From: Octopus sinensis
Lineage: Eukaryota
NCBI RefSeq assembly: GCF_006345805.1
Contig: NW_021832598.1
Coordinates: forward strand, 1 to 64,000
Length of the DNA stretch: 64,000 bases
Reading direction: 5' to 3'
Both the position numbers and the translations under genes were made by a program. How positions within the stretch are numbered: the first letter of the stretch is position 1; every line of letters starts with the position of its first letter. Of this stretch, positions 40,478 to 62,272 are shown piece after piece. The notes under the pieces were generated by a model. It searched no databases. It was not told the DNA's origin and saw only the letters and a list, made by a program, of their open reading frames with translations.

Positions 40478-40642
40478 CTAGAAATCAGAGAAGTTACGTC
40501 TCTTGAAGTAAGTGGAGATTTTTGCGTGGGCTGCAACACGATCTCTAAGAGACCTCAGTTTTGGATAGTTGCTCAGCAGAGATGGGTTCTCATGCAGTGG
40601 ACTTTCAAGGGCGGCGTAGCACATCATATCACACATAGTCAT
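40478..40642 (-). CDS. S-crystallin gene A, coding exon 7 (last): [54 protein letters not shown]
   Basis: tttccttcag acceptor, phase 0, TAG at 40480-40478; S-crystallin C-terminus; missed by the ORF track. Confidence 0.95.
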
Positions 40643-40891
40643 CTGAAGGAAAGATACAAAGAGAAGCGTAAGATTGTGAGTTTGTATGTATGCATGTTAA
40701 TACACACATATGCATACACAACATGCACACAAACTAACACGCACACACACACATGCTTTATTTGTGGGTAAAAAATGTAACCAAGGGTTTCATATGGGAA
40801 GCGTTACACAATTTTTCAACTGAACAGCTTTTGCATATTGATTAAACCTCTCACGTGTGCATACACACAAACACATATACACACGCACGCA

Positions 40892-40947
<56 letters not shown>

Positions 40948-41629
40948 CTTTGTTTATTGACAAAAAGCAACCAAGGGTTTCATATTGAAAGCATTCCGCA
41001 ATTTTTCAACCGACGCACTTTCCAATGCTGGTAAACATCTCATGTATGCATACGCACACGCACACGCACACAAACACACTCACTCACACACACACGCGCG
41101 CGCACTCATATATACATATGTATATATAAATACCTGATCTGATGCGATCAGGTATACTGTTTGCATGCATAGAAATTATGTCGTTTATGGAATCAGAAAA
41201 ACAGAAACTATTCAAAGAGTGGGGCGTTTTGAGAATGGTAAAAGAAAGATATACGGACAAATACATAACCGTAACCACGGCGCATGCAAACATGTATGAT
41301 ATACGAAAAATAACATTTCTAGGCACCGCACATATATTTGGTAAGTTTGTTTTTTTTCAGTGTAATAAACGTAATAAAACCAAAACAAAATTTGAACACA
41401 CTATATGTAGGAGGAGGTACCAAGACGTTCCAGCGCGCTAACAGATGGCGGCACACGGTTGTGTACGCAGTGTGCAGTAAAGATTGTCTGTGCCCTTCAT
41501 GAGGCAGTGCGCTGATTAACCATGCTCTGGGATATGCCAATACACACAGATAGCGAAATAAGTCTGGATACGTGTCAGAGATCACTTTCTAATCGTTGTA
41601 TCAAATCTAATACATGACAGTGTTTCTCT

Positions 41630-41986
41630 AAAAAAATGGAGAAACTTTCAAAATGCAAAGATCTAGAAATAGAGGCAACTCGAGTGTGGAGCATAAAAAC
41701 AAACAATTCCTATAGTAGTAGGCGCATTAGGTATGTTAAGAAAACATTCAGACAAATACATAACAAATACCCCGGGACTAACAAGTATATATAACATACA
41801 GAAAATAGCACTACTAGGTACTGCACACATAATACGTAAAACACTTTCAATACAGTGAATATAAGAGCACCACAGCAAACCACAGCACATACCCAAGACA
41901 CAAAGAGCTGCGCTCGGTAGTGCAGTGAAAGCATGTGATGAAAATGACATTACTGCATAATAATAATAGTGATGATGATGATGATG

Positions 41987-42034
<48 letters not shown>

Positions 42035-42050
42035 TAATAATAATAATAAC
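41630..42050 (+). mobile_element. Dong/R4-clade LINE 3' end with (TAA)n tail
   Basis: KCKDLEIE..IPIVVGALG..YNIQKIALLGTAHIIRKTL*, short 3' UTR and TAA tail; weaker copy at about 41130-41345. Confidence 0.7.
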
Positions 42051-42054
42051 GTAC

Positions 42055-42162
42055 TTGGTCACCCATGAAGTACTGATTTCCATTGTGGTACATTTCCAAA
42101 GTTCTCTCCATGAAAGGAAGCACCCTGCGACAAGTTTCCATAAACCTTCTTCGCCTTTCGTA
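42055..42162 (-). CDS. Gene A coding exon 6: [36 protein letters not shown]
   Basis: cttgcttttag acceptor, gtacgt donor, 108 nt, phase 0-0. Confidence 0.95.
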
Positions 42163-42463
42163 CTAAAAGCAAGAAAGCATAAATGAATATTAGATTAGAT
42201 GCAGCGGTTTTTCATTATGATAAATATCTTTACTCTCTTAACTGATGGTATGTTGTACTGCTTGTTGAAGTTCATACCGCGAACACACAGATGAAGACAC
42301 AGATACATACACGCTCACACACACGTTCGTTTCTACGTTAGGCTGTAACAAAAATGTTTACACTAAACTGAAATAACGGTCAATAATTTTGTAGTGTCCA
42401 TAGTTATCATTCTTTTCCAAGAGTAGTGTTCACTGCGTCTTCGAAATTTCGATTTCCTTAGCC

Positions 42464-42510
<47 letters not shown>

Positions 42511-42713
42511 GGTGCCTTCTTTCAGTTCCGTCTACCATATCAACGCACAAGGCTTTGGTCGGCCCGAGAATATAATAGAAGACACTTGCCCAAGGTGTCT
42601 CGCAGTGGGATTGAACCCGGAACATGTGGTTGGTAAGCAGCTACTTGCCATACAGCCACTCCTATATATACATATTCATATATACGTATAGGTGTATATA
42701 CATAACCATTGAT

Positions 42714-42763
<50 letters not shown>

Positions 42764-42770
42764 ATATATA

Positions 42771-42803
<33 letters not shown>

Positions 42804-43327
42804 ATAAATAATATAAATTGTTAGGTAGGTAGGTAAGTAGATGTACATATATATATATATATACATACACACAAACACACGCATATATATATATATATAT
42901 ATATATATGCTAGCTAGCTAGCTAGATAGATAGAGCGGTTAATATATGAAACGATGATGTTCATAATTATTTTTTAAAATTCAATTACGATGGATAATTC
43001 TTCTTAGAAATGTATTGTCTTCTGCGGCGATGGAAACTATTCGTGTAAAATATTAACAAACACGACTATTTCGAAGTTCAATCTATTTTATTAACGCCTT
43101 TTCATGTTTCATTGACTGAATATGTTGAACACTAACTGAGATTTCTTCTATGAACTCCGTAGTATTCACTGAACAATATCAATATTAGTTTTAAATAAAT
43201 ATACTATATTTTGCTGTCTCTTGCTGGTATTCAGAAGGTCGTTTAAGGTGAGATTTTTTTTATTTTATTGTAAAAAACAAAATCTACTCTAACTTGTGTA
43301 CGCATACACACACGTGTGTGTGTCTGT

Positions 43328-43382
<55 letters not shown>

Positions 43383-43546
43383 GTGTGTGTGTGTGTGTGG
43401 TGTGTGTGTGTGTGTGGTGTGTGTGTGTATATACTTGCACATACGTAAGCATAAGTTTGCATATATTTGTACGCAGGTGTGTTTTGAATGTGCATGTATA
43501 TCTCTATATATTTGTGCATATATATATATATATATACACCTATGAG

Positions 43547-43579
<33 letters not shown>

Positions 43580-43984
43580 TGTGTGAATGTATATATATAT
43601 ATGTATACGCACATGTTTCCTACAATTTGATTCCATAAAGATAGATTCTTTTCAAACGAAAAAGAAAACGTTATTTTAATTGTAAGTATATCGTTACAAA
43701 ATAAATAACATGAGGGATATAGCAACATAGAATGACACGGTGAAAACTAATTAAAGAGTTGTTAGAAAATTGCTTCAAATCGTTAAAGTTGTGATGTTAA
43801 TCTTTTGAGATAAAAGAATTATAAGTGAAAGCTATCAGTGAAAAGGAACAAGCTCCATTTATATTTAACTAGCGTGCAAGTAAAATAGTTGATTGTATCA
43901 ACACCATTGCTTAATTGATACCAGTTTTATCGATTCAGAAGTGATTATAATTAAGCTTGAGCTCTGGACGGAGATGGAGAGATT

Positions 43985-44371
43985 AACTAGATATCCAATC
44001 CGTCAGAAGAGAATTAATACATTCGAGCTTTGGTGTTGGAGAAGACTTTTACGGATTCCATGGACAGCGAGTCTCACCAATGGAGAAGTTCTTAAGCTAG
44101 ATCAGGCCGAAAATGTCGCTAGAAGCTAGGATCACCAAGCATAGATTGGCATATGTCGGTCATATTATGCGGAGAAAATCCCTGGAGAAGGACATCATGC
44201 TCGGAATGGTCAGTGGCAAGAGAGGAAGAGGCCGACCAAGAACCCGCTGGCTTGACGCCATCAAGTGTGATACCGGAATGGACATAGCCAATCTGAAAGA
44301 AGCGGTCCAGGATAGAACTGACTGGAGGACACTGATCCAACGAGTAACCGAGAGTCGACTTCGACTGAGCG

Positions 44372-44376
<5 letters not shown>
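43985..44376 (+). mobile_element. RTE (BovB-like) LINE 3' fragment ending in a (GATA)n tail
   Basis: FELWCWRRLLRIPWT, GHIMRR, RGRGRPRTRWLD and DRTDWR; stop runs into the GATA array 44372-44537. Confidence 0.8.
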
Positions 44377-44441
<65 letters not shown>

Positions 44442-44442
44442 C

Positions 44443-44536
<94 letters not shown>

Positions 44537-44569
44537 CTGAACAACAAAGAAAAAAGGACAGAATCTTAC

Positions 44570-44800
44570 CATTACGCCTTCGTTGAAACTGTCGGAATAA
44601 GAGCCAGAGTAAGAGCCAGGACCCATGTCGGAACTAAGGCCAGAGGTGAAATCTGATCTCATGCCGGGTTGCATGCCGGATTGCATGCCGGTCTGCATTT
44701 CTGTCCTCATATCTGACCTCATGTCTGATCTCATGTCTGATCTCATGTCTGACCACATGTCAGGTCGCATGTCGGAAGACATGTCACAACCCATGTTCGA
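44570..44800 (-). CDS. Gene A coding exon 5 (loop exon b, 77 aa): [77 protein letters not shown]
   Basis: ttcttttctag acceptor, gtaaga donor, 231 nt, phase 0-0, open frame, at the known S-crystallin loop position. Confidence 0.88.
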
Positions 44801-44960
44801 CTAGAAAAGAACAGATAATAATAATAATAACAACAACAGCAACAACAACAACAACACCAACAACAATAATGATAATAATAATAAAAATAATATTAATAAT
44901 GATAATAGTAATAATAGCGATGATGATGATGACGACGACGACGACGACGACGACGACGGC

Positions 44961-45009
<49 letters not shown>

Positions 45010-45655
45010 TTGATGATGAACCCTTTAATATATTCACTAGTCACCGTTACTAACTCTCTGTAGAATGATGCAATTGCTGAAGTTTCAATGACTGCATTTC
45101 ACGACTAATAGACAGCTGCGATACCTTCACAGCATTCCACACACTCAATTTTCATTTACGCTTGTCCATCGATTGCACATTCGTCAAAGCATTAATGAAC
45201 TATGTGATCATTTGCATGACAAACTATGACTACACCTGATAACCGTTCAGGGTTCTTTGTAGGTTTCTCAGCTTTATCTTGTACCTGGATATCATCAGCT
45301 ATGGCATTCCGAGCATTCCAAGCAGAAGTTGATTGACAGCTAAACCATCTGAAGAGTGGAGTTCGTTTCTTCCTCAAGAAGAGTAAGGCCAAAATATATA
45401 ATCATATCAGAGACAGGATAGCTCATGACATAACTGTTAGGCGATAACATATTAAGCACCTGCGACATCTATTGCATTATTCTGTATGTGACTGACTACC
45501 TGCTCGTAATTTTGTATAATTAGGTATCAAGCATCTGAACAGCATGTTTAGTGCAGAAACAGATGCTGGCCGACTATGAACCTTGCTTGGTACTGAGCTG
45601 TAATAGCTGATGCGTTCTCTTTATTGCATGCTTCTGCTATCACTTCAATGTGTGT

Positions 45656-45962
45656 TCGGTTTGTTCTATCTCGAGCCACGCCGGGCTCATAAGGGCCGGT
45701 TTCCCGGTTTCCTCGGCGTATAGATTCCCCACCTGGACGGGACGCCGGTCTGTCGCAGGTGAGCTGCAAGATGCAGGAGGAAAGAGTGAGAGAAAGTTGT
45801 GGCGAAAGAATCAGCAGGAGTTCGTCATTACTTTCTGCCTGAGCCGCGTGGAGCTTAGGTGTTTCGCTCATAAACACACACATCACCCGGTCTGAGATTC
45901 GAACCCGCGATCCCTCGACCGCGAGTCCGCTGCTCTAACCACTAGGCCATGTGCCTCCACAT
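45656..45962 (-). mobile_element. Full-length tRNA-derived SINE with 14-bp TSD
   Basis: acttcaatgtgtgt at 45642-45655 and 45963-45976; intact tRNA-like head. Confidence 0.85.
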
Positions 45963-46784
45963 ACTTCAATGTGTGTGTGGCTTAGTGGTCATTGTGTTTA
46001 GCTCACAATTATAATACAGAAAGTTTGATTACTAGACAGAGCAATGCGAAGTGTCTCTGAGCATTGAATTTATTTTCAAGTTGCTTTAGTCTACTCAGCT
46101 GAAAGTGTGTAGAAGCCGGGTATTACTGCAGCTGTCTCTCCCACTTCAATTGCCATATCCTGCATCTGACGTTGGGTCAAGAGTGGGATGATCGAGAGAG
46201 TCGAGAGTGTCGGGAGAGTCGGGAGAGTCAAGAGAGTCGAATGAGTGACTATGTCTATTATTGATTACATAGTCAACTAAGACAATTAGCGAAAGCATGA
46301 TAAATCCTACAAGAAAATAATCGTTGACAATTAACGACTTCCTCTTACGTCACAATTTTGCAATCCTTTAATATATATGTCTATGGCCTCGATTACTGAG
46401 CTGTTCCTCAGAATGATGATGTTGTTGTCAACGTATGTTAGCACAATTCTCGATAATAAAATTGGAACTGAGTGCTCCTTACACATCATACTGTTGCAGT
46501 GCAGTTTCAAGGGTCAACATCTATAATAGTGTTTAAATGGGACAAACCTATCTGATGTATAGTGTAATGTAAAACATCTTCCGTATGTAGCCATTTAGCA
46601 GGACCAATGATCGAAGTAAAACCGAACTGAGCTGTACTTAAATTAAAACGATCCAATCCCTGAAAACGAAGCTAAGACTAAAGGTATAACCATGAAGCTA
46701 TTAGGATTCGTTGGCAAACCCTGTCGTATGATCTATATTGATGCAAATGTTTCAGAGCCAGATTTATAACCCACTTTCTTGTAC

Positions 46785-46955
46785 CAGTTTCATCTTAAGG
46801 TATGAGCACACTGGGCAGTTGCCAGGGGGTCTCTCGGGTCTAGAGACCCAGTTCTAATATACGTACGTGTGACGGCTTGCTGTGATTTAATAAATATTCT
46901 AAGGCCTAGTGCAATGAATTGCCTGGGGGCCTATAATACTGCTAAGATGACCCTG
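46785..46955. mobile_element. hAT-like MITE, degenerate
   Basis: cagtttcatcttaag / ctaagatgaccctg ends; flanks tcttgtac and cactgtac resemble an 8-bp TSD. Confidence 0.45.
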
Positions 46956-47517
46956 CACTGTACTATGATCGCACGAGAGGAAGGTTGTCCTAGATAGATC
47001 TGCCATAAATATATAAGTCTGTATGACACCATCGAGAAATACCAATAACATTGGTAGTACATTAGTCAAAGTCTTTAACCTTGCATTTATCAGATTATTT
47101 GAAGTAAATTATCAAATATATTTCTTGTTTACGTTTTTCCTCTCCAGCAAAATCCTTTCCCAGCTCACAAAAGTGGACATGTTCCCACTCTGCTGCCAGT
47201 TGAAGTGAATATATGTCAACAGAGTAGCGAACAAGCCTTGCATACAGAGCAAATACGAAGCTGGTTACGCAGACTCAATAGTGTTGTTAAATGTCTTTAT
47301 ATATTTCATCTGATGTATAATTATCATATGCAATGTGTTTGCATGCGTATTTAAGTGTTACTGTATGTTGTTTGTACCTTAACTTTGACGTATGCGACAG
47401 AAATTATGTGAAGGTGAAATTAATTAATCGAATGTATTAAATAGGAATCAGAGAGATAGATTGATAGATAGATAAATAGATAGCTAGATATATACACAGA
47501 CAGATAGACAGACAGAC

Positions 47518-47621
<104 letters not shown>

Positions 47622-47726
47622 TGGCAGACAGAGAGACAAACAGAGAAATAAACAGATAGATATGTGCATAGAAGTACTCAATATCTTATTAGAGTGTGAA
47701 ACAACAAAATATCTAAAAGTTCTTAC

Positions 47727-47780
47727 CATTCTACCATCAAGATCAGTGTAACGTTGACGCATGTCAGACATTCTGTCCCA
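47727..47780 (-). CDS. Gene A coding exon 4 (loop exon a, 18 aa): WDRMSDMRQRYTDLDGRM
   Basis: tttcctttgcag acceptor, gtaaga donor, 54 nt, phase 0-0; Met/Asp/Arg composition and SDMR motif shared with loop exon b. Confidence 0.8.
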
Positions 47781-49249
47781 CTGCAAAGGAAATTAAAAAC
47801 ATGCATGTATCGATTGTAACATCGTAACAAATGTACAATATGACAGCATTCTTACCACATTAAAAAAATGAGGTCCGAAGTATAAATTAGATATACAATG
47901 CACTAAACCGTTATATTATAAGTGGCTTTAATTTCTTGATAAATAGATGTGTGCGTGTGTGTGTGTGTGAGTGTGTATGTGTGTGAGTACTTGCGTGTAT
48001 GAATATATATATATAGTTATTGTATATTCTGTTAAGAACGTAGAAGTGTACGGTATAAAACTCGTCCACCTTCTGATTTACCCTGTGCTATCTAGTAGTA
48101 ATATAGTATGTACTTCCAGGTTTGCACTTGGGCACCTGTCGTGTGTGAACATATAACAGAAAAAAATGGATTCAACAAGAAGGGGTACGGCTGGACATTT
48201 ATTTTTTAATCACTACAGTTGTTTCCACGCGACGTTGTTCTCTAGGAATGCAGGTACTTGATTATGTAACTCTTTCCTTGCATAATGAGATCTAGTTGTG
48301 TTTTCTAAGGCGATACGCAACTATTGTCTCCGTAAGTTTAAAATCCTTGGTTTCAACAACACCCCTTCTGTCTGTTGTGGCCTAAATTCAGTAGTAGTCA
48401 CTGAGCTTATCAGGGTGTATTGTTGTTGAAGGGCCATTGGCAGACTGCTTTTAATCAGTAGATGTATTGGGATAGTGATTCTTGGTATTGTTAAAGGGGT
48501 TGCTGTTATAAAGGGATTGACATTTTATTTCCTTGTACTGCTGTTTTGTTCTACACGGTTTGCTACACATGCAGATTTCCTTAGCTGACCTTTAAAATTC
48601 AGCGCTCGGACACATACACACATATACACACACATAAAATTGAGATTCAGTTGAATTAGGTACTTAAGTTGAAGCACCAAGTTAGTCCGGTATTATCAGC
48701 ACAGCTCGAATGTGAATAAAATCAAAATAAGCAACACGCTATTAAGTTGTGATGCAGAACGACCGTTTCAAGAGGCTCCACTTAATTGAACAATGTAATC
48801 ATTACATCAATTGAAATACAGTGCCATCTTCAGTTGCACCAATAAATAAATGGAATTTTAACAACTAGGGCACATTAAAATAATTTTTCTCAAATATTTT
48901 AACAGAGGAAGAAGAGGGAAGACATTTATGTTGCCGCTGTTGTAGCTAAGAATAGACTACACAGCTAAGAATCACATGGAGCATAGTGGGGTCATAGGGT
49001 TGTAAGGGATTGTAATTAATTTCTCATTCATTATTCTCTTTATCAACTACTAAATCTCAGAATAGAAGACTGTATCTATTTTGAATAAAGGACAAGAGTG
49101 AGTTGACAGCTCATGGCTAAGTGCGCTCATAGATATTTATCTGTGAGTGTTACAGATGCGGGGGCGCTATGCAGTGATGAGTGAAATAGTTATGCTATCA
49201 TCAGTTCGAATATACTTGAGGCACGTTTGAACCGGTGAACAAAATACAT

Positions 49250-49518
49250 ACTGCATTTTGGCACGGTAAAATATATCCCGTCTTTTGACAAATGGCGTGT
49301 ATATCAGTTCGCATCGCTACCTACCCAGACCGTAAGATGCAAGCATCTTTTCAATCAGCTTGTAGTGCCGACCACCTGGTGTCTGTGACCGAGGAGGAGA
49401 TAGCTACTCCGAATTCTTACATATCACGGTCTTCGTAGCTAACGCTGCGAACTGATATAGATGTATACATACCATTTGTCAACAAACAGGATATATTTTC
49501 CGTGATAAAAGGCAGTGA
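49250..49518. mobile_element. Foldback/MITE-like element with long imperfect TIRs
   Basis: cacggtaaaatatatccc..ttgacaaatgg..tatatcagttcgca mirrored by tgcgaactgatata..ccatttgtcaa..ggatatattttccgtg; inner gaccgt..aag arms also pair. Confidence 0.6.
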
Positions 49519-49613
49519 GTAGCTTTTTCATAGGTCCGAATGTGATTCAAGCGTATTGGTACGGACAACAGCTTTACTATACACACACACAGACACAACA
49601 CACACACACACAC

Positions 49614-49696
<83 letters not shown>

Positions 49697-50856
49697 ATTA
49701 TTTTTATCTCTTATGTTGTTCAGTTCTTATCGTGAACTGTGGCAAAGGTGGGGCAACACTTTGAAAGAAAGGATTCATCAGAACAAATCGACACTTTTTT
49801 TTTGCTTATTTATTCATTTATACATTTATTTAGTCGTAAACTCTGCTTCTTATACGGTCGGTTCCATTACAGAAACGCCGTTACGCTGAACGTAAACAAG
49901 CCAACACCAGTTGTCACGCAGTAGAGGTTACGAACCCAAACTCTAAGATACGCCACACACAGCCGCACGCACACACAGGCACGCACGCGCTTTCACTCAC
50001 ACATATACGATAAGCTTATGCACAGTTTGCGTCAACCAAACTCGATCATACGGCGTTGGTCGGCCCGTGGCTATAATAGAAGATATTTGCCCATGATGCT
50101 GTACACAGGGAAAAGCTAAGACTGTATGTTGATTCACGCCTTATTCTGAGGTGGCCATCAATACGAATCCAAATTGCTTCTTCACACATCAAATGAAGTC
50201 CTACGTGCGCGATTGTTACATAAGATGTGTGTTTATTATTCTAAACCTCGGAGGGCAATCAAAATCCAGACCTAAACAGAAGGAACGTCGTCGTGGGAGA
50301 GATAGAGACAGAGAGGGCGGAAGGAAGGGAGAGAGAGAGATGGAGTGAGAGAAACAAAGACAACAATCCACTGCGAGTACTGGTGTACTGCAGCTATCTC
50401 TCCCACTTCAATTGCCACATCCTGCATCTGCCGTTGGGTCAAGAGCTTTACCAGATTAAAGAAAATTTCAAATACACTTTGCACAGAACTGGGGACGAAT
50501 ACCGTTAGGCATTTGTGCCGAAGTTTTTGCAACTATCAAAGTTCATGCCTCATATTTCATAAAGGTAGATACAGATATATGAATATATCTGTATGTACGT
50601 GTACACATGTGTATGTGTCTGTGAGTGTGTAAAACATGAGTATAACACAGGTTTGTATTAAAGATCTTACGAGCGTTTCAACATTATGGTTGTTTGGAGC
50701 CCTTCGATGCATGCTCCAAATGCATATAGGTGTCCAACCATAAAGGATCCTCAAGCGACAATCTATGGCATCAGGTTTTATATGAGTAGTGTAATATATA
50801 GATTCAGAGAAGCCCCATACTGTGGTAGCTGCAAGATTCTCTGAGTTTATGTCTTA

Positions 50857-50896
<40 letters not shown>

Positions 50897-51306
50897 ATAT
50901 ATACTCTTTACCCTTTTACTTGTTTCAGTTATTCGACTGCGGCCATGCTGGAGCAGCGCCTTTAGTCGGGTAAATCGACCTCAGGACTTATTCTCTGTAA
51001 GCTTGGTACTTATTCTATAGTTCCCAAGCGATGTTGGGAGGGGGTAAAACACAGACACACAAACACAGACACACAAACACACACACACACACGCGCACAC
51101 ACATATATGATATATACGACGGGCTTCTTTCAGTTTCCGTCTACCATATCCACTCACAAGGCTTTGGTCGGCCCGAGGCTATAGTAGAAGGCACTTGTCC
51201 AAGGTGCAACGCAGTGGGACTGAACCCGAAACCATGTGGTTTGTAAGCAAGCTACTTACCACAGAACCACTCCTGCATCCTAACAAAACCTCACCATTTA
51301 CTGACT

Positions 51307-51339
<33 letters not shown>

Positions 51340-51367
51340 TGCATGTGTGTGTGTGAGAGAGAGAGAC

Positions 51368-51442
<75 letters not shown>

Positions 51443-51513
51443 CATACAGCTTCTATGTGGCTGCATGTTTCACTATGGTTACATCAAGAAGGAAACAATA
51501 GCGTTTAACCTAC

Positions 51514-51629
51514 CATCATTCTGCCGTCTCTGTCATGGTACATCCTCATGTAGTCATCCATGATATCAAAGAAACTATCAGAAATGTAATCGATGCGTGC
51601 CATATCGATGTTGTTTTTACCGTGATAAC
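51514..51629 (-). CDS. Gene A coding exon 3: (G)[38 protein letters not shown]
   Basis: tcttctacag acceptor, gtaggt donor, 116 nt, phase 1-0; S-crystallin [10 protein letters not shown]; missed by the ORF track. Confidence 0.95.
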
Positions 51630-51723
51630 CTGTAGAAGACAGACGTTGATGATTACATATACATATACTTACATACATACATATATATATACATATACAT
51701 ACATATAATATATATATATATAA

Positions 51724-51762
<39 letters not shown>

Positions 51763-52308
51763 ATGTTACGACGACGAGGGTTCCGGTGATCCGAATCAAC
51801 GGAACAGCTGCTCGTGAAATTAACGTGTAAGTGGCTGAGCACTCCACAGACACGTGTACCCTTAACGTAGTCTCGGGGATATTCAGCGTGACACAGAGAG
51901 TGACAAGGCCGGCCTTTGAAAACAGGTACAACAGAAACAGGAAGTAAGAGTGAGAGAAAGTTATGGTGAAAGAGTACAGCAGGGATCACCACCATCCCCT
52001 GCCGGAGCATCGTGGAGCTTTAGGTGTTTCCGCTAAATAAACACTCACAACGCCCGGTCTGGGAATCGAAACCGCGATCCTATGACCGCGAGTCCGCTGC
52101 CCTAACCACTGGGCCATTGCGCCTCCATATATATATAGATGGTAAGACAACAAAAGAATGAAAAAGACCTCGATATTGTGTAAATAGAGGAATTTATCTG
52201 TAAAAGTAATATGTGACAATTTTTCGGTAGCCATGGTAAAAGTCCGCCATCTCTTTAGTTATCCGGCAAAAAAAAAATGAAAAAAAGGGAAAAAAAAGCC
52301 GATGGCCG

Positions 52309-52369
52309 GATAACTGAAGATTTGGCGGCGTGGATTTCCACCTCGACATCCGAAACTCGGAGTTTTATC
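52309..52369 (+). ncRNA. Hammerhead-like motif in a solo PLE-tail element
   Basis: GATAA-CTGAAGA-tttg..catc-C-GAAACTCGGAGT-T-TTATC; stem II partly decayed. Confidence 0.5.
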
Positions 52370-52431
52370 ATGGCTACCGAATAATTGTCCCATATTACAT
52401 TTACAGTTATATATACATAACATATATATAT

Positions 52432-52484
<53 letters not shown>

Positions 52485-52825
52485 GAGAGAGAGAGAGAGA
52501 GAGTGAGAGATAGATAACTAAATAGAAAGATAGACAGATAGATAGAGATAGATACATAGAATATATATATATATTTAGATAGACAGGCAGATAGATAAAT
52601 ATATCTTTAATGCATAGTGCCTCTACAAATTAAACTAATAAGTAATACTTCGTATTACATCGACTGGACAAATGATTTCGATAACCTTCAGGAATGGGTC
52701 AGCGTTGATATATCTGAAGAAGTGGTTACAAAATGTGGATACTCCAGAGTGTATATATATATATGTGTGTGTATGTGTTTATCTGTGTACGTGTATACAC
52801 ATACAAACTCACACACATATACGCT

Positions 52826-52856
<31 letters not shown>

Positions 52857-53419
52857 ATATATATATTTATGTATGTATGTATCCACAAAGAAATAGATTA
52901 AACGTTGACAATTGTAGAGGTTTTGAGAAGAAAAATTTCATTCATGTAATAATTGATTCCGCTTCCCCTCTTGTATATCTGTTTTGAATTGTAATATTAT
53001 CAATGATTTATAACGTTACGATAGCTTGTTATATTATCAATACAAGTTTCATTCAACATAGAAACTTAAGAAATCTCAACTTTTCAGTTGTATCTGCATC
53101 ACAGTAAAATATTTATACAAGGGTGAGCACACACGGAAGGCTGGACATCAGATTTGCTATACTCTACGCCATTTACGCTTAATAATCACCTATTTCTACT
53201 AATTAGCCCCTTGTCAATCTCGGGTGCTTTCATTACTATTATTAGATATTTCACCACTTACCTTTAGATAATTAGCAAACGAAGGCTCTCTATGTAAACC
53301 TATGTAAAAGCGTATACATACAAATAGACAATTATCACGAACATGAACACTTCCTTAATTTAGAAAACAGTGACACAAGCACGAAATTCACGGGCTTACA
53401 TACGGGTGCATATACATAT

Positions 53420-53650
53420 ACCTATTTCTTTACTACCCACAAGGGGCTAAACATAGAGTGGTCAAACAAGGACTGACAAAGGGATTAAGTCGATTACATT
53501 GACCCCAGTGCGTAACTGGTACTTAATTTATCGACCCCGAAAGGATGAAAGGCAGAGTCGACCTCGGCGGAATTTGAACTCAGAACGTAACGGCAGACAA
53601 AATACGGCTAGGCACTTCGCCCGGCGCACTAACGTTTCTGCCAGCTCGCG
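53420..53650 (-). mobile_element. Single Nin/Deu-like SINE copy
   Basis: Same unit as the 29690-30430 array, with tRNA-like head. Confidence 0.7.
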
Positions 53651-54122
53651 GCCATATATATATACCGATGCATACATACAAGACTACTTTGAGGTTGTCT
53701 AATTCCAAGAAAATGCAATACTTGTTACTCGGTTGGAAGCCACCTCTTTCGACAAGCCTTGAGTCGAGAAACCTCCCGATATAATTAAGAAAAAATATAT
53801 GTCGAAGACACACTATGTAAAGTTGCTCCTTTCATGCAAGTCTGATGAAGTACATCCCTAATGTCTAAAACTTTAAATATTACATAAATTTACACTTTGA
53901 AATTTAGCACAAACTGACGTTGTAAAAAGAGTTGGTACAGGAACAATTATAACGAATGCTAAAGAATTTTGATGTCTTCTTTTTATTTGGATTATATATA
54001 TATGTATGTGTGTAAAGAAATGTATATATATGTATAAATATATATGTATATATATATATATACATATATTTATACACACACACAGATATATATATATACA
54101 TATGTGTGTGTATGTATGTATA

Positions 54123-54252
54123 TATGAGGGATGCATGTAAAATCTTGAGCCTCAAAAAAATTAAAACATGGTACAAGATTTCTGATGAAGGCTCGAGACA
54201 TCCAGGCTCAAAGGCCTTGAAGGTTCAAAGCCTTTCATAGGAACCCCACGTA
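54123..54252. mobile_element. Mariner-type MITE, degenerate
   Basis: tatgaggg..ttgagcct left end and aggttcaaag..cccacgta right end within a TA tract. Confidence 0.4.
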
Positions 54253-54601
54253 TACATAAAATATATATATATATATATCTATATATATATATATATATAT
54301 TACATATATATTTATATGCATATATATATAATATGCATATATTTGTATATATAAATATCATATACATGCATATGTATACACGCGCGCACAAGAATATACA
54401 TATGTATATTATGTATAAATATATATGTGTATGTTTGTGTGTGTGTATAACAAAATACAAAAATAGATATATATGACAAAATACATTTATACAACAAAAT
54501 TCATCATATATATATCTAAATACGTCATATAGTACAATTTATCCGTGTGGGTGATTATTAAAACTAACTGGGTATATATATACATACATATATATGTATA
54601 T

Positions 54602-54640
<39 letters not shown>

Positions 54641-54650
54641 CATATATATA

Positions 54651-54693
<43 letters not shown>

Positions 54694-55367
54694 ATACATA
54701 CACATATATACATAACATATATATATATATGTATATATATATATGTATACACACATATATGCGTACACAGACATATATATATATTAGACATGCAACATCG
54801 TACAAGTAGGTTTATGTATATATATATACTTGCATATATATGTATATATATATACATATATATATATATATGTATATATATATATTATATATAAGACAAA
54901 TACATGATATCATTCAATTTATTGATGCAATTATCTGTGTTTTTCGCTATACATGTATAGAAATATTATCATAATTGAATGCAAACCTCCCAGAAGCTCT
55001 GGCCTAGAATTCAGGCAATGTTTTATTATTTTGAATTTTCCACTGATTTAGTCTGAAGAAGATGGGCCAAATTGATTCTGGTGAGTTCACATCAATACAG
55101 TAATTTTTTTTTCTAAAGAAAAAGAAACTAGCATAAAATAGATAACTTCATATTCTAAGTGATAGTCTCCAAAATAAAACTAGGATGAGACAAAACATAA
55201 ACAAGCATAAATTCTATGGACAATTATTTGGAAATGTCCATTCTTTATAAGATTCCCATCTAAAACAAAACAAAAGAAAGCAAAACGTAAAAAAATGAAT
55301 AAAACGATAAAAGGAACAAAGACAGAATAAATAGAAGCAACGAAGAATTGATCGTCGTTAGACTTAC

Positions 55368-55463
55368 CAAATTCTCTGGCAAGATATCTTGCAATAGCCA
55401 TACTCTGAGGAATTTGCATACGACCATCGATCTCCAAGACAGGCACCATTGAGCCAGGCATTT
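55368..55463 (-). CDS. Gene A coding exon 2: (K)[31 protein letters not shown](G)
   Basis: tctctaacag acceptor, gtaagt donor, 96 nt, phase 1-1. Confidence 0.96.
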
Positions 55464-56292
55464 CTGTTAGAGAAAAAAAAACATCGATAAGTTTTTTATT
55501 GTTTCTGTTGATTGTGGTTATTTTGTTGATATTTTGGTTTATTATCTATCATAAAAGAAAGGGTAAATGTCCTTCCTGGGTTATACATTTATATATATGA
55601 GGCCAGTTACCAGTTCCCATGGTGTATGAGTGATTACGATCTCTACAAGAACCATGGACGAGACGCCGGTCCGTCGCAGGATTACTCATTTTTGTTAACC
55701 GAGCGACTTGCAGCAACGTGGAAGTCTTTTGTTCAAGAGCACAACACCCAGTCCAGGAATCGAAACTGCAAACTTATGATAATGTGTGCAAAAACCCAAA
55801 ACACTAAGCCACGCGTTTCAGCTTTAAGGATAAGGCTCGTTCCCGAATAGGGATTCTTTGGTGTATATAATTCCCCATTATTTTTACCAGCTGAATGAAC
55901 TGGTGCAATGTGAAATTATGTGTTTTGTTAAAGAACACAACTCATTGCCCGGTCCAAGAACCGAAACAGCAACCTTACGATCATGAGAGTAACACCCTAA
56001 CCCCTAACACACGTGCCTCCACTTTATTCTAATGCACTTAGTATTTCTAGCTTAAAATATCATATAATGTAACATTATAAACTCAAATGGAATTAAGGGC
56101 TAAGATTCTCGTTTCGGTAAAGCCTGATTGTGGGATAAACCTACCGTTTTCTTTTCTTGTTCTTTCATTCTTGTCTACTAAACAGATACACACTACCTTG
56201 TTGATAATGTTATAGTTAATATACATATACCTATATATGTACACATAAACACACACACACACACAACACACACACACACACACACACAGACA

Positions 56293-56325
<33 letters not shown>

Positions 56326-57334
56326 TAATAGTTATCGCCATACTAATATGGTAGTCTATAAATATAAAACTAAAGCTGTCGCTGATTAGCTCCAAGAGGC
56401 CATCGCCTCAAGCTGTCTATATGACACACGAACCTGCGTCCATTACAACCCTATATATACACGCAAACATACTTAAATAGTTGAATTTTGAATTGATGGA
56501 TTACTCAATATTGCTTAGTAGAGTACCATATTTAATTTGGTACTCTAGGTGCTACCGATTCTGCCAGCTTGCCACCTCCGTGTAATATTTCGTAAACGTA
56601 TCATAATAGTTTCAAATTCTGGCAAAAGGCCAGAAAAGTTTGACAGTGACTTCGAATGTGTCGCCTAAGTAGCCGTCATCAGATGTTATATGTATGTAAG
56701 TGTGTGAGTCTGTATGTAATACGATTTGTTCTGCATTCATACATCCTGCTTATTCTTCTTGGTGTTAACTGAGAATTTTTTGCTGTTTTCTGTATGCGAG
56801 TGGCAACTTTAGAAAGTGTTTGTTTTTCGCTGTTATCAATTTTTAAGATCCACGTGTTGGCAGAAGATGCAAAACGTCGGAAAAGGGGTTTCGATGTATT
56901 TATTTACGGTGCTTCTTTTTCATACCGAGTCCAAATTTCGTCCATTCAACGGGATTGGTTTAATGGGCTTCCATCCACCAAGATGTGTAGATTTAGCTAC
57001 ATTCTCATTCTTAGATACTATTGGTAATCGCTCTATTGAGCCAGCAAGGCAGTTTCTACAAGATCGCTCAACCTGCGAAAATAACAGTCATATACCCCCC
57101 AATTAGCATTCAACTACCTTTATAAAAGGAAGTTTGCTATATAAACTTTGTCATAAGATAATTAGAGCTACGGGATTTTTTTACCGTTTTCTATTCTTTT
57201 ACAGATTAACGCATTTCATTCATTGCAGTGCGGCCATCGTAGTCCACCACTTTGAAGGGTTAAGTGGATCATATCCACGCCATATATATATATTATATAT
57301 ATATAATATATATATATATATATAGATATATATA

Positions 57335-57417
<83 letters not shown>

Positions 57418-58202
57418 TAAATACATACATACATATATATATACGGGTACATATATATATATGTGTGTGTGTATATATATATGTATAACAATATTATATT
57501 AAATTATATATTCACGTACATATAAATACATATGTATATAGGCATACATACACAAGTATACACACACACACACACTCATATATATATATGCATACATACA
57601 TGCATACATACACACACATATATATGTATATATGTATGTATTTGCATTTATATATATATGCATATGTATATATAGAAGGATGTCACTGGCTATACACACA
57701 CGTACTCATAAGTGCATATATGCCCATACTGATATTTATTGCTTTTAGCTGTTCGTAACCAAGATATTATAGTAAGACCAAACCTTACTTTTTATCAGAA
57801 TTAATAAATGAATAATAAAAGAAACTATTTTGCGAAATTGCAAATATTTTTGCTACGAATATAATATAGAATCTATGATAACAAGCTAGTATTTCTCTTG
57901 AAGTAAGTGTTAATATATAAGTCGTGGAGGAAAAAAATACTTGTAATTGGCTACAGTCAGAAGAAACAGAAATAATTGTTTGGTTATGTATTAATTTAAC
58001 AGCATCCAGTAAATATGTATTTTCACGGTCTATAGTAATAACTTATTGCTGGTGTCTTCTACAAAACACACATACACAATCAGATACAGTTAGACACACA
58101 CACACATACATTCAAACAGGAAATACAAACATACATAGATACTCATATTTTATACACATTTATGCACACATACGTATGTATATATATATATATGTTTGTG
58201 TG

Positions 58203-58234
<32 letters not shown>

Positions 58235-58307
58235 ATATGTATATATTATATATATATATATAATACACCTTCACACACAAATATATATATACATATATGT
58301 ATATATA

Positions 58308-58350
<43 letters not shown>

Positions 58351-59199
58351 CATAAAGGACATGGTTTTATATTCTTGAGTCCTTTCATTTTAGCTGTCAT
58401 TATTATATTTCATTTTATTATTGCCGGAAACATGAATTCATCGTATACTTAAAGAGTTTTTTACCAAAATACTTTGCACGAAAAAATATTTTCATCATAT
58501 TTATGAGGTACATATTTCAATTATTGATATAATCACACATACAAATACACACACACGCAGAAACACACACAGACACAGCTATGTGGTGTGTATGTGTATA
58601 TGTGCGTGTGTTTGGAATGTGTCTATGCTTATGTGTAAGAACCTTTCTATGTGTGTGTGTTTATGTGAAAAAGAAATTGCGTATGTACATAATGATGCAA
58701 ATAACATCCATAACAGTAACAATAAAGTACAAACAAAATGAGAAGTCGAAAATGAACGTGAAAATATTATGGACAGAATAATAGGAAATATCGCAAAAAG
58801 AAATCGAATGTAGTATTAGAAAAAAACACCGAAGAAAACACGAAATGTAGATATGTAAATGAGAATTGAAAGTTTTATAGAACAAGTATTATATTAAAAG
58901 AAAATAATATATATTTTTGTCCTCTTCTTTTGGCATTTTTAATACAAGTGGAATTCTTTCAAATATCTAAAGATATTCGCGTAACCTTTTGTGAGGAGTG
59001 GGTAAGCTGATTTCATCGACTCCAGTACTCAACTAGAACTCATTTTATCGACCCTCACCCCAAAAGGAGGAAACCTATAGTCACCCTGAGCAGAATTTGA
59101 ACCAGGACGAAATGACGGTATGCATTTGTTCTGACGTGCTACCGATTCTGCCAGCTTGCCACCTTCTTGTAAATATTTCGTAATAGTATCATAATGGTT

Positions 59200-59721
59200 T
59201 CAAATTTTGGCAAAAGGCGAGAAAATTTAAGGAGCAGGGGAAGTCAATTACATGGAAACCAGTACTCGACTGGTGCTTATTTTATCAACCCCGAAAGGAT
59301 GAAAGGCAAAATCCACATCGGTGGATTTCGAACTCAGGATGTAAAGATAGATAACATACCGCTAAGCATTTCGCCCGGTGTGCTAACGATTCTTATTTCT
59401 TTACTGACCACAAGAGGTTACACACAGAGGGAACAAACAAGGACAGACAAACGGATTAAGTCGTATATATCGACCCCAGTGTGTAAGTGGTACTTATTTA
59501 ATCGAGCCTGAAAGGATGAAAGGCAAAGTCAACCTCGGCGGAATTTGAACTCAGAGCGTAGCGGCAGACGAAATACCTACTTCTCTACTACCCACAAGGG
59601 GCTAAACACAGAGAGGGCAAACAAGGACAGACAAACGGATTAAGTCGATTACAGCGACCCCAGTGCATAGCTGGTACTTAATTTATCGACCCCGAAAGGA
59701 TGAAAGGTAAAGTCAAATATA

Positions 59722-59770
<49 letters not shown>

Positions 59771-60600
59771 CCTTTCTATTGACTATCCCCCTCCCTCCAA
59801 ATTTCAAGCAGAAGACCTGAAATTTGGAAGGAGGGAATAGTGGATTATATTGACCCCAAGACGATTCAGCTGGTACTTAAAATATCGACCCCGAAAGGAG
59901 GAAAGGCAAAGTCGACCGCGGCAGAATTTGAAATCAAAACGTAGCGACGGTTGAAATACCTATTTCTTTACTACCCACAAGGGGCTAAACACAGAGAGGA
60001 CAAACGGATTAAGTCGATTACAGCGACCCCAGTGCATAGCTGGTACTTAATTTATCGACCCCGAAAGGATGAAAGATAAAGTCGACCTCGGCGGAAATTG
60101 AACTCAGAACGTAACGGCAGACGAAATGCGACTATGCATTTCGCCCGGCGTGCTAACGTTTCTGCCATCTCGCCGCCTATAGTAATATTAATGACTTCAA
60201 ATTTTGGCGCAAGGCCAGCTATTTTGTGGGTGAGAAAGAGACGAGTAGATCGACTCCAGTGATCAAATGTTACTTAATATATGGACCTCTACAGGATAAA
60301 AAGTAAATTCGACCTGAACGGCATTTGAACTCAGAACGTAAAAACGGGCGTAATGCTACTAAGAAGTGTGACACTGCGCCAGTAGTTTTTGAGGGAAAAG
60401 GATAAGTCGATTACATCACTGATACGTATTTTATCAGTACTTATCTGATACTTATTTTATCGACCTCAGAAAGCATGAAAACAATGTCGACTTCGGTGGT
60501 ATTGGAACTCAGAACATAATGCCGGAAGTGATCTCGCTGAACATTTTGTTTGGCACGCTAACGCTTCTGCAAGCTCACCTTAAAGATATTAATGATTTCG
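59200..60600 (-). mobile_element. Second tandem array of Nin/Deu-like SINE units with degenerate flanking copies
   Basis: Unit anchors at about 59460, 59644 and 60013; same linker as the 29.7-30.4 kb array. Confidence 0.7.
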
Positions 60601-61230: not shown

Positions 61231-61800
<570 letters not shown>

Positions 61801-61871
61801 CATGTGCGTATGCCTATAGATATGGGGAATTTCACTGCTGGCAAAATTGATAAATATAAATGATTTTATAC

Positions 61872-61939
<68 letters not shown>

Positions 61940-61945
61940 ACTTAC

Positions 61946-62263: not shown

Positions 62264-62272
62264 GTCCACCTG

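What the first reader, a model, noticed from the sequence alone, without database searches (positions are those of the whole stretch)
44570..44800. Loop exon is a coding minisatellite with Met every fourth residue
Seen: 12 consecutive tetrapeptides start with Met ([48 protein letters not shown]). The 4-residue register continues as [24 protein letters not shown]. The DNA has a 12-nt period (atgagatcagac-type units) and 14 of 77 residues are Met. Established: Met and aromatic residues raise the refractive increment, and Met/Gly/Ser/aromatic low-complexity tracts favour self-association. Inference: repeat slippage tunes loop length and stickiness in 4-aa steps.
Basis: partly seen in the sequence, partly recalled or inferred. 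Interest (0 to 1): 0.7.

Follow-up and report, generated by a model that had tools for sequence, protein, structure and literature searches.

The report
Met-periodic loop exon of octopus lens crystallin
This is a real coding exon of an octopus-type lens protein (S-crystallin): it encodes a floppy, methionine-rich loop built from 18 degenerate copies of a 12-base unit, an unusually regular example of a loop type already known in cephalopod lenses.

Summary
On the minus strand, 44800..44570 is a 231-nt, phase 0-0 exon with canonical splice sites. It encodes 77 residues, with Met at every fourth position for 12 consecutive tetrapeptides. No shuffle out of 200,000 reached this, and DNA autocorrelation at lag 12 is 0.64.

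It is coding exon 5 of 7 in an intact 300-aa S-crystallin gene (sigma-GST fold), spanning 62078..40478 on the minus strand. A short-loop paralogue lies downstream.

Together with an 18-codon mini-exon (47780..47727), the exon forms a ~95-residue insertion between helices alpha4 and alpha5. The same two-exon architecture occurs in the Octopus vulgaris gene for P0003. It also appears in the protein sequences of squid SL18 and squid lens transcripts, where the block DMGP.G.YS.SY...SFNEG.M is shared.

The Met-led array is lineage-specific. It arose by local unit duplications, because adjacent units are more alike than in shuffled order.

'Slippage tunes the loop' is only partly supported. The homologous loop exon has the same length and differs by one residue across three Octopus species. 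No alleles or orthologues of this gene were available.

The computed refractive increment of the loop (0.195) is below that of the core (0.200), so Met compensates for Ser/Gly rather than raising it.

This is a new member of a known kind, of moderate interest.

The parts
44570..44800 (-). Loop exon: coding exon 5 of 7, 231 nt, 77 codons, phase 0-0. Encodes most of the alpha4-alpha5 insertion.
   Evidence: Translation. Splice sites. Only one open frame on this strand. The C-terminal block aligns with squid and O. vulgaris loop sequences.
44651..44794 (-). Twelve consecutive Met-led 12-nt units, M-x-[S/T/P/C]-[D/E/G], consensus ATG AGA TCA GAC. Includes the blocks [20 protein letters not shown] and [12 protein letters not shown].
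   Evidence: ATG shows 0 mismatches to the consensus, against 17, 11 and 6 in codons 2-4. Adjacent units are more alike than in shuffled order.
44570..44650 (-). Older, conserved tail of the exon: [27 protein letters not shown]. Same 4-residue register but mostly without Met.
   Evidence: Aligns with DMGPSGVYSDSY...AFADGRM (P0006), SFNEGRM (SL18, P0030) and SFNEDSM (O. vulgaris P0003).
47727..47780 (-). Mini-exon, coding exon 4: 54 nt, phase 0-0, WDRMSDMRQRYTDLDGRM. First part of the insertion.
   Evidence: Found by an AG...GT open-frame scan. An 18-codon exon sits at the same place in the O. vulgaris gene (L001 24088-24141). 14 of 18 residues match YDRMSDMRSRYIDMDGRM of squid transcripts P0001. 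It resembles the 3' end of exon 3.
61946..62078 (-). Coding exon 1 ([17 protein letters not shown]...).
55368..55463 (-). Coding exon 2 ([33 protein letters not shown]).
51514..51629 (-). Coding exon 3: helix alpha4, ending ...[15 protein letters not shown].
42055..42162 (-). Coding exon 6: start of helix alpha5, [36 protein letters not shown].
40478..40642 (-). Coding exon 7 with the stop codon.
62256..62328 (-). Putative promoter. TATATAAG at 62263-62256, about 185 nt upstream of the ATG. Upstream of it are TGACTAA (62287-62281, AP-1-like) and TGACATAGC (62328-62320, fits the TGACnnnGC ARE core).
   Evidence: Read directly. The link to AP-1/ARE elements of squid crystallin promoters is recalled from Tomarev et al. 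1992/1994 and was not tested.
44372..44536 (.). (GATA)41 microsatellite in the intron, 33 nt beyond the exon's donor site.
44815..45019 (.). (ATA)n and (GAT)n microsatellites starting 13 nt upstream of the acceptor. On the coding strand, the (TTA)n part runs into the polypyrimidine tract.

Best explanation
The feature is coding exon 5 of an intact, seven-exon, 300-residue S-crystallin gene of an octopod. S-crystallins are lens refractive proteins derived from sigma-class glutathione S-transferase.

Together with an upstream 18-codon mini-exon, the exon inserts about 95 residues between helices alpha4 and alpha5 of the GST fold. That is the position of the known 'long loop' of S-crystallins.

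The exon has two parts. The C-terminal third (...DMGPG.YS.SY..SFNEG.M) is old and shared with squids. The N-terminal two-thirds is a lineage-specific array of twelve 12-nt units (ATG-AGR-TCA-GAC = Met-Arg-Ser-Asp and variants). This array grew by local tandem duplication, through slippage or unequal exchange, of an M-S-S-D-type unit that also occurs in squid and Octopus loops.

Inferred function: the loop is an intrinsically disordered, net-negative tether or sticker on an otherwise net-positive dimer. It would take part in the loop-mediated, valence-limited attractions that gel S-crystallins in the lens. Its Met, Arg and Asp content keeps the refractive increment of this extra mass close to that of the folded core.

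Shown here: exon structure, frame, periodicity, homology, position in the fold, predicted disorder in a homologue, and origin by unit duplication. Inferred: lens expression, the gel and sticker role, and selection for Met.
For: Gene model: seven exons, all with AG/GT, 903-nt CDS with no internal stop.

Fold: GST_N and GST_C_3 domains. The best solved match is octopus S-crystallin OctS4, 5b7c, E=1e-93. Its alignment breaks exactly at the alpha4-alpha5 loop: query 1-123 and 212-300 match, and the insertion is unmatched.

H-site positions are M100, D101, M104 and H108, against F, N, V and F in the active GST. This is the crystallin-type pattern described in PMC4976375.

Architecture: the same mini-exon plus loop-exon layout occurs in the O. 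vulgaris gene for P0003.

Expression of homologues: squid homologues with a mini-exon-like segment and a long loop are encoded on intronless ~1.3-kb contigs from sequencing-run assemblies. One variant was seen on 61 contigs and another on 101. A Todarodes lens protein, AAB22101, belongs to the same group.

The conserved C-terminal block is shown in the alignment.

Disorder: AlphaFold2 of P0003 with a 50-sequence alignment gives a core pLDDT above 90. The loop-exon residues are mostly below 50 with no secondary structure, and the mini-exon is helical at about 66. The window's loop folded alone has mean pLDDT 54.7.

Duplication origin: adjacent units have a mean Hamming distance of 4.06 against 5.61 for shuffled order (7 of 100,000). 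Units 5 and 6 are identical, and there are sub-blocks MQxG x3 and SYS[GD] x2.

Met enrichment recurs in other loops with different periods: MSS/MxSG in Octopus, and MMSGN (lag 5, 0.45-0.55) in squids.

Composition: no Lys, D:E = 10:2, and net charge -6 against +5 for the core. This fits the Arg-over-Lys and Asp-over-Glu trend of high-increment S-crystallins (PMC4047532).

Loop polydispersity setting gel cross-linking: Cai et al. 2017 as cited in PMC5703641.
Against: No transcript, protein or orthologue carrying this exact loop exists in the 5.8-billion-protein search or among 1.84 billion representatives. Expression and inclusion of this exon are therefore unproven.

Both inserted exons are phase 0-0, so skipping either would stay in frame. 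An O. bimaculoides model (P0002) has the mini-exon-like segment but no long loop.

The loop's computed refractive increment is lower than the core's.

No AATAAA lies on the coding strand within about 780 nt after the stop.

The species is unidentified.

The evidence that Met is selected rests on non-independent repeat units.
Confidence: 0.78

Rival explanations
1. Neutral filler. The exon is real, but the Met-period-4 array is a mutational by-product. A 12-nt unit that happened to start with ATG was amplified in a disordered loop that tolerates almost any hydrophilic sequence. Repeat number and Met content are not tuned for anything.
For: Loop length and sequence differ enormously between paralogues and lineages, from 16 to 207 residues between the alpha4 and alpha5 motifs. 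Each lineage has its own repeat type, with periods of 3-4, 5, 10 and 12. The loop lowers rather than raises the computed dn/dc. Period-4 'xxxD-M' arrays turn up in many unrelated predicted proteins. The exon is embedded in microsatellite-rich DNA.
Against: Within the 12 Met units, ATG has 0 changes against 34 in the other three codons. Met-rich repeats arose separately in squid (MMSGN) and Octopus (MSS) loops. The homologous Octopus loop is conserved to one residue across three species, which points to purifying selection on loop sequence. The Arg/Asp bias matches high-increment S-crystallins (PMC4047532).
Confidence: 0.25
2. Cassette or silent exon. The gene mostly produces a shorter-loop protein of 205 or 223 aa, and the loop exon is alternatively spliced or no longer used.
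For: The mini-exon (54 nt) and the loop exon (231 nt) are both symmetric, phase 0-0. P0002 of O. bimaculoides has the mini-exon-like segment without a loop exon. No protein with this loop is on record.
Against: There is a strong acceptor (11 of 12 pyrimidines, then AG) and a GTAAGA donor. The frame is open only in the coding register. The conserved ...SFNEG.M end is kept over the octopus-squid split. Homologous long-loop forms are contiguous in squid transcripts and are in the annotated models of three Octopus species.
Confidence: 0.12
3. Not coding at all: an intronic minisatellite that happens to be open in one frame.
For: It is flanked on both sides by microsatellites. The antisense strand is also open over most of it (ORF 44625..44804), because the unit junction GAC|ATG contains the palindrome CATG, so ATG also reads on the opposite strand.
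Against: It has exact phase 0-0 length and canonical splice sites in the right place between exons 4 and 6. Its tail is homologous to known loop sequences of lens S-crystallins.
Confidence: 0.02

Closest known systems
S-crystallin SL18 of the squid Nototodarus sloanii (UniProt P27016; P0030) and the Todarodes lens S-crystallin AAB22101 (P0115/P0088)
   Same: Sigma-GST fold with a very long alpha4-alpha5 insertion. The insertion has a mini-exon-like segment ([FY][DE].MS.MR..Y...) followed by a long low-complexity stretch ending in ..F[NT]EGRM, directly before ..[14 protein letters not shown]. Full-length identity is 52% at 100% coverage.
   Different: The squid loops are 86-173 residues, with only 3-9% Met and no period-4 Met array. 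Todarodes has 10- and 12-residue repeats. SL18 keeps F100/N101, whereas the window gene has M100/D101 (PMC4976375).
Octopus 'S-crystallin 2/3-like' proteins of 272 aa (O. vulgaris CAI9723148 = P0003; O. bimaculoides XP_014783449; O. sinensis XP_036358738)
   Same: Identical exon architecture, checked in the O. vulgaris genome: an 18-codon mini-exon, then a phase 0-0 loop exon ending SFNEDSM. Met-led units MFSG, MQSS, MSSG, MDSS and MSSG, with 20% Met.
   Different: The loop exon is 49 codons, not 77. Units are MSS/MxSG rather than MRSD, with almost no charge. Overall identity is 60%, so it is a paralogue or a distant orthologue. Its length is invariant across three species.
Squid long-loop S-crystallins with (N)MMSG repeats (P0068, P0070, P0073, P0120 and others; metatranscriptome sequences)
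   Same: Met-rich (about 30%) tandem-repeat loop at the same position. Close relatives differ by whole repeat units.
   Different: The period is 5, not 4. The loops are uncharged Asn/Gly/Ser/Met. They lack the mini-exon-like segment and the SFNEG.M tail, so this is probably an independent expansion.
Octopus vulgaris S-crystallin OctS4 (PDB 5b7c; PMC4976375)
   Same: Closest solved structure (E=1e-93). The same fold and the same insertion site between alpha4 and alpha5.
   Different: Its 'long loop' is only 11 residues (112-122). In the window gene the segment between the alpha4 and alpha5 motifs is 85 residues longer (111 vs 26).
Fish gammaM-crystallins (Met-rich, high refractive increment)
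   Same: Enrichment of Met in a lens protein of an aquatic animal, linked to a high dn/dc (PMC4047532).
   Different: An unrelated fold. There the Met is in the folded domain, not in a periodic disordered repeat.
Designed ionic self-complementary peptides (RADA16-I, Ac-RADARADARADARADA-NH2; PMC10113214)
   Same: [16 protein letters not shown] is a 16-mer with the same +,0,-,0 period-4 charge pattern. RADA16 forms beta-sheet hydrogels.
   Different: The neutral positions hold Ser/Met instead of Ala. The segment is embedded in a protein loop. No evidence of beta assembly was obtained here, and AlphaFold2 gave a low-confidence helix. This is an analogy only.

Membership tests
S-crystallin (sigma-class GST-derived cephalopod lens protein) | GST N-terminal thioredoxin-like domain plus an all-helical C-terminal domain | tested here: met
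   Pfam GST_N at 42.9 bits and GST_C_3 at 51.1 bits, both above their cut-offs. 5b7c S-crystallin matches at E=1e-93 and squid GST 1gsq at E=2e-42.
S-crystallin (sigma-class GST-derived cephalopod lens protein) | Closest relatives are cephalopod S-crystallins rather than enzymatic GSTs | tested here: met
   The top 75 hits are cephalopod S-crystallins or unnamed sequences of the same type. Non-cephalopod GSTs and prostaglandin D synthases start at E=7.5e-55 and lower scores.
S-crystallin (sigma-class GST-derived cephalopod lens protein) | Replacement of the GST-sigma electrophile-site residues F98, N99, V102 and F106 (S-crystallin positions 100, 101, 104, 108) | tested here: met
   The window protein has M100, D101, M104 and H108. 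The criterion is taken from PMC4976375.
S-crystallin (sigma-class GST-derived cephalopod lens protein) | Insertion ('long loop') between helices alpha4 and alpha5 | tested here: met
   The alignment to 5b7c breaks at chain residues 142/146. About 88 query residues are unmatched there. The homologue model shows the insertion between H83-105 and H179-205.
S-crystallin (sigma-class GST-derived cephalopod lens protein) | Abundant, lens-preferred expression | not testable with these tools
   No expression data exist for this species. Only a TATA box with AP-1/ARE-like motifs was seen upstream.
SL18-type very-long-loop subgroup | Mini-exon-like segment followed by a long low-complexity segment ending ..F[NT]E[GD].M | tested here: met
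SL18-type very-long-loop subgroup | Retention of Phe100/Asn101 (noted for SL18 in PMC4976375) | tested here: not met
   The window protein has M100/D101. It shares the loop architecture but is not an SL18 orthologue by this criterion.
Minisatellite (tandem array of 10-60-bp units, typically variable in copy number) | Head-to-tail array of 10-60-bp units | tested here: met
   18 units of 12 nt. TRF reports period 12 at 85-95% matches over sub-arrays. Lag-12 autocorrelation is 0.64.
Minisatellite (tandem array of 10-60-bp units, typically variable in copy number) | Copy-number variation between individuals or close species | tested here: inconclusive
   No alleles or orthologues of this gene are available. 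The homologous exon in three Octopus species is invariant in length, as are squid cluster-1 members. Squid MMSGN loops do vary by units.
Ionic self-complementary (RADA16/EAK16-type) peptide | Strictly alternating + and - charges at every second position, separated by uncharged residues, over about 16 residues | tested here: met
   The sequence [18 protein letters not shown], exon residues 18-35, read directly.
Ionic self-complementary (RADA16/EAK16-type) peptide | Beta-sheet self-assembly into a hydrogel | not testable with these tools
   AlphaFold2 single-sequence gives a helix at residues 16-37 with pLDDT about 55. The hydrophobic moment is highest at 180 degrees: 0.95, against 0.40 at 100 degrees. 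Neither result is decisive.

The most novel reading that the evidence does not exclude
The (Met-Arg-Ser-Asp)n block is not just filler. It could be the specific 'patch' of a patchy-colloid lens protein: an ionic self-complementary, RADA16-like segment ([16 protein letters not shown]) with a Met/Ser face, making weak, reversible, valence-limited contacts between dimers. The number of units would set bond strength. The periodic, solvent-exposed Met would make the contact, and hence gel density, sensitive to oxidation, or act as a sacrificial antioxidant in a tissue without protein turnover. If so, unit-wise repeat change would be a direct genetic handle on the refractive-index gradient.
Probability: 0.15. 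Interest if true: 0.65.

Novelty: new member of a known kind. Interest (0 to 1): 0.38.

Why it matters
The graded refractive index of cephalopod lenses is attributed to S-crystallins whose disordered loops differ in length. This gene shows unusually clearly how such loops can be made: a symmetric exon that grows by duplicating a 12-base unit while keeping Met at a fixed position.

The comparison across relatives yields a concrete hypothesis that can be tested. Met-rich short tandem repeats arose repeatedly in these loops with different periods, yet they are conserved once formed.

For a specialist this refines known biology rather than overturning it. The strictly alternating Arg/Asp pattern with interleaved Met/Ser is a specific, cheaply testable candidate for the attractive 'patch'.

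Tried and rejected
1. The bacterial promoter/terminator scan of the 5' region has no meaning for a eukaryotic gene. I read the sequence directly instead.

2. Pfam on the loop peptide alone gave no family. Pfam on the two ORFs of the dispersed repeat next to the exon also gave none, so calling that repeat a retroposon 3' end rests on recollection only.

The loop exon alone, run against 1.84 billion representatives, returned only unrelated period-4 low-complexity proteins such as MGTDMRTD, CADMRADM and LSGIYSD arrays. No S-crystallin and no orthologue appeared.

4. The key primary papers are not held: Sweeney 2007 (PMC2373386), Cai 2017 (PMC5682922) and Madl 2017 (PMC6245563). Their content is cited only through PMC5703641, PMC4976375 and PMC6397165, or marked as recollection.

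5. The O. bimaculoides locus of P0002 is not on record. I could not check whether a skipped loop exon lies in its intron.

6. Species identification failed. No hit exceeds 86% identity on any exon. The only DNA similarity to the O. vulgaris locus listed (first 80 of 157 matches) is dispersed repeats at 68-98%. No paralogue was found within 10 kb downstream of the O. vulgaris gene, so synteny is undetermined.

7. No coding-strand AATAAA lies within about 780 nt after the stop. The 3' end is undefined.

8. Amphipathic alpha-helix idea: Met at i, i+4 drifts 40 degrees per unit, the hydrophobic moment at 100 degrees is only 0.40, and the AlphaFold2 helix has pLDDT about 55. Not supported.

9. My first hand-typed protein carried one extra Gly after AREFG. 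It was corrected by scripted splicing. It affects only trivially.

Full report
**1. Observation**

The plus strand at 44570-44800 reads as a CATGTC-rich stretch. Its reverse complement translates without a stop into [77 protein letters not shown]. The other two frames of that strand are closed.

Fourteen of the 77 residues are Met. Thirteen share one mod-4 register, and twelve are consecutive. In 200,000 shuffles of the peptide none reached either value.

Tandem Repeats Finder reports period 12, 24 and 36. Base autocorrelation is 0.64 at lag 12 against about 0.2 elsewhere.

Cut into 12-nt units, the exon reads: [72 protein letters not shown], then GVM.

**2. What it belongs to**

The stretch is bounded by ...ttcttttctAG and GTaaga. 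Minus-strand ORFs nearby carry GST and S-crystallin motifs.

Scripted splicing of seven exons gives a 903-nt CDS with canonical AG/GT at every junction and a 300-residue protein. The exons are 62078-61946, 55463-55368, 51629-51514, 47780-47727, 44800-44570, 42162-42055 and 40642-40478.

The protein has GST_N and GST_C_3 domains. Its best solved relative is octopus S-crystallin OctS4 (5b7c, E=1e-93), ahead of squid GST.

Database hits are octopus, argonaut and squid S-crystallins. None is identical: full-length identity is 54-60%, and per-exon identity is at most 86%. The source is therefore an octopod whose version of this gene is not in the collections.

Dispersed repeats shared with an O. 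vulgaris locus at 68-98% identity agree with that.

A second, short-loop paralogue lies downstream on the same strand, from 28452 to 10548. It has no loop exon.

**3. Position in the fold**

The alignment to 5b7c covers the query up to the start of the mini-exon and resumes at [11 protein letters not shown]. The mini-exon and loop exon therefore replace the short alpha4-alpha5 loop. This is the 'long loop' site described for S-crystallins in PMC4976375.

The four positions that distinguish active GST-sigma (F, N, V, F) from the inactive major crystallins are M100, D101, M104 and H108 here.

**4. Is the exon real?**

Three lines of evidence say yes.

- (a) The O. vulgaris gene encoding P0003 has the same layout. 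It has an 18-codon exon and then a phase 0-0 loop exon of 49 codons, ending SFNEDSM|gt.
- (b) The last third of the window exon aligns with squid proteins. [20 protein letters not shown] matches DMGPSGVYSDSY...AFADGRM (P0006) and SFNEGRM (SL18, P27016). The mini-exon WDRMSDMRQRYTDLDGRM matches YDRMSDMRSRYIDMDGRM at 14 of 18 positions.
- (c) The squid homologues come from intronless ~1.3-kb contigs assembled from sequencing runs, some seen on 61-101 contigs. One relative is a Todarodes lens protein deposited in the 1990s.

What is missing is any transcript of this particular gene.

**5. Structure of the loop**

AlphaFold2 of the O. vulgaris homologue with 50 aligned sequences gives a confident GST core, with pLDDT above 90. 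The mini-exon is a moderately confident helix (119-132, about 66). The loop exon has no secondary structure, and its pLDDT is mostly below 50.

The window's loop folded alone has mean pLDDT 54.7, with a weak helix over the MRSD block.

The loop is low in complexity (3.38 against 4.09 bits) and hydrophilic. It has no Lys and a D:E ratio of 10:2. Its net charge is -6, against +5 for the rest of the protein.

**6. How the repeat arose**

Adjacent 12-nt units are more alike than units in shuffled order: mean distance 4.06 against 5.61, with 7 of 100,000 permutations as low.

Units 5 and 6 are identical, and units 7 and 12 differ from them only synonymously. [12 protein letters not shown] and SYSG/SYSD form further local sub-families, which explains the 36-nt period. 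This is the signature of repeated local duplication in a 12-nt register.

The unit itself is old. GACATGTCCTCT (D-M-S-S) is tandemly repeated in a squid transcript, and ATGTCATCA(GGA) in O. vulgaris.

The mini-exon resembles the 3' end of exon 3: [19 protein letters not shown] against WDRMSDMRQRYTDLDGRMv. Exon 3, the mini-exon and the loop exon all end ...G-[RV]-M(-M)|gta. This suggests, by inference only, serial duplication of an exon end followed by repeat expansion.

**7. Selection or drift?**

Within the twelve Met units, the ATG codon has no mismatch to the consensus, while codons 2-4 have 17, 11 and 6. The units are not independent, so no p-value is claimed.

Met-rich repeats with other periods occupy the same loop in other lineages. 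Octopus has MSS/MxSG at 20% Met. Squids have MMSGN at about 30% Met, with lag-5 autocorrelation of 0.45-0.55. Todarodes has 10- and 12-residue repeats with little Met.

The literature supports high increments for Met, Cys and aromatics, low ones for Ser, Ala and Pro, and an Arg/Asp over Lys/Glu trend in high-increment S-crystallins (PMC4047532).

I used per-residue increments recalled from Zhao, Brown and Schuck 2011; these were not fetched. The loop computes to 0.195 ml/g, the core to 0.200, and the loop with Met changed to Ser to 0.189. Met thus offsets the cost of a Ser/Gly-rich disordered insertion. The loop does not raise the protein's increment.

**8. Is slippage 'tuning' the loop now?**

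For this gene the question cannot be answered, because no alleles or orthologues are available.

In relatives the evidence is mixed. The 272-aa Octopus proteins from O. vulgaris, O. sinensis and O. bimaculoides have loop exons of equal length that differ at one residue. All seven full-length members of a squid 90% cluster are 311 aa. By contrast, closely related squid MMSGN loops differ by whole or partial units, for example P0068 versus P0124 by one MMSGN.

The best reading is episodic expansion followed by conservation. This is a degenerate coding tandem repeat rather than an active hypervariable minisatellite.

**9. Function**

Cai et al. 2017, as summarised in PMC5703641 and PMC6397165, hold that polydisperse disordered loops determine physical cross-linking and hence gel density across the squid lens. 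By homology and position, the window loop would be one of the longest such loops: 111 residues between the alpha4 and alpha5 motifs, against 26 for typical octopus S-crystallins.

A specific feature noticed here is that [16 protein letters not shown] has the alternating charge pattern of the hydrogel-forming peptide RADA16-I (PMC10113214). The hydrophobic moment is highest at 180 degrees. This is an analogy, not a result.

**10. Verdict**

The object is a new, very regular member of the known long-loop S-crystallin class. Interest is moderate. No step needed to be referred.

Noticed in passing
window 10548-28452 (minus strand): A second S-crystallin/GST-like gene, about 12 kb downstream of the first and in the same orientation. 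It has five coding exons: 28452-28320, 25444-25349, about 24327-24214, about 12900-12787 and 10706-10545. Its alpha4-alpha5 segment is short (16 residues by the same measure), it has F100/D101, and it has no loop exon. Its exon 3 donor is a weak GTTAGT.
   Followed up: partly
window 47727-47780 vs 51514-51570 (minus strand): The mini-exon looks like a partial duplicate of the 3' end of exon 3 (9 of 19 residues identical, tblastn E=0.019). Exon 3, the mini-exon and the loop exon all end ...G-[R/V]-M(-M) before gta. This hints at serial exon-end duplication as the origin of the insertion.
   Followed up: partly
window 43893-44536 (plus strand): A dispersed repeat, 92% identical over 388 bp to L001 33331-33717 of O. 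vulgaris. It carries ORF fragments (...[38 protein letters not shown]) and is followed directly by (GATA)41. It looks like the 3' end of a retroposon whose tail is the microsatellite. Pfam gave no hit. (GATA)n tracts recur near other exons, for example just upstream of the second gene's ATG at about 28490-28700, and at about 47490-47650 and 51290-51400.
   Followed up: partly
window 44625-44804 (plus strand): The antisense strand of the loop exon is also an open frame of 59 aa, with its own period-4 Met ([12 protein letters not shown]). This is because the unit junction GAC|ATG contains the palindrome CATG. There are no GST exons on that strand, so it was treated as a by-product.
   Followed up: no
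window 62256-62350 (minus strand): Upstream of the first gene's ATG are TATATAAG, TGACTAA (AP-1-like), TGACATAGC (fits the ARE core TGACnnnGC) and TGACGT. This is reminiscent of the AP-1/ARE elements reported for squid crystallin promoters (recalled, not checked).
   Followed up: no
window 44815-45019: Long (ATA)n, (AAC)n and (GAT)n/(GAC)n microsatellites lie immediately upstream of the loop exon's acceptor. The polypyrimidine tract of the acceptor is continuous with the (TTA)n run on the coding strand.
   Followed up: no
proteins P0129, P0142, P0175: Unrelated predicted proteins elsewhere carry long period-4 arrays of the type M-x-T-D or C-A-D-M-R-A-D-M. 12-nt repeats containing GAC-ATG may be a recurrent class of translated minisatellite. 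Their origin and reality were not examined.
   Followed up: no
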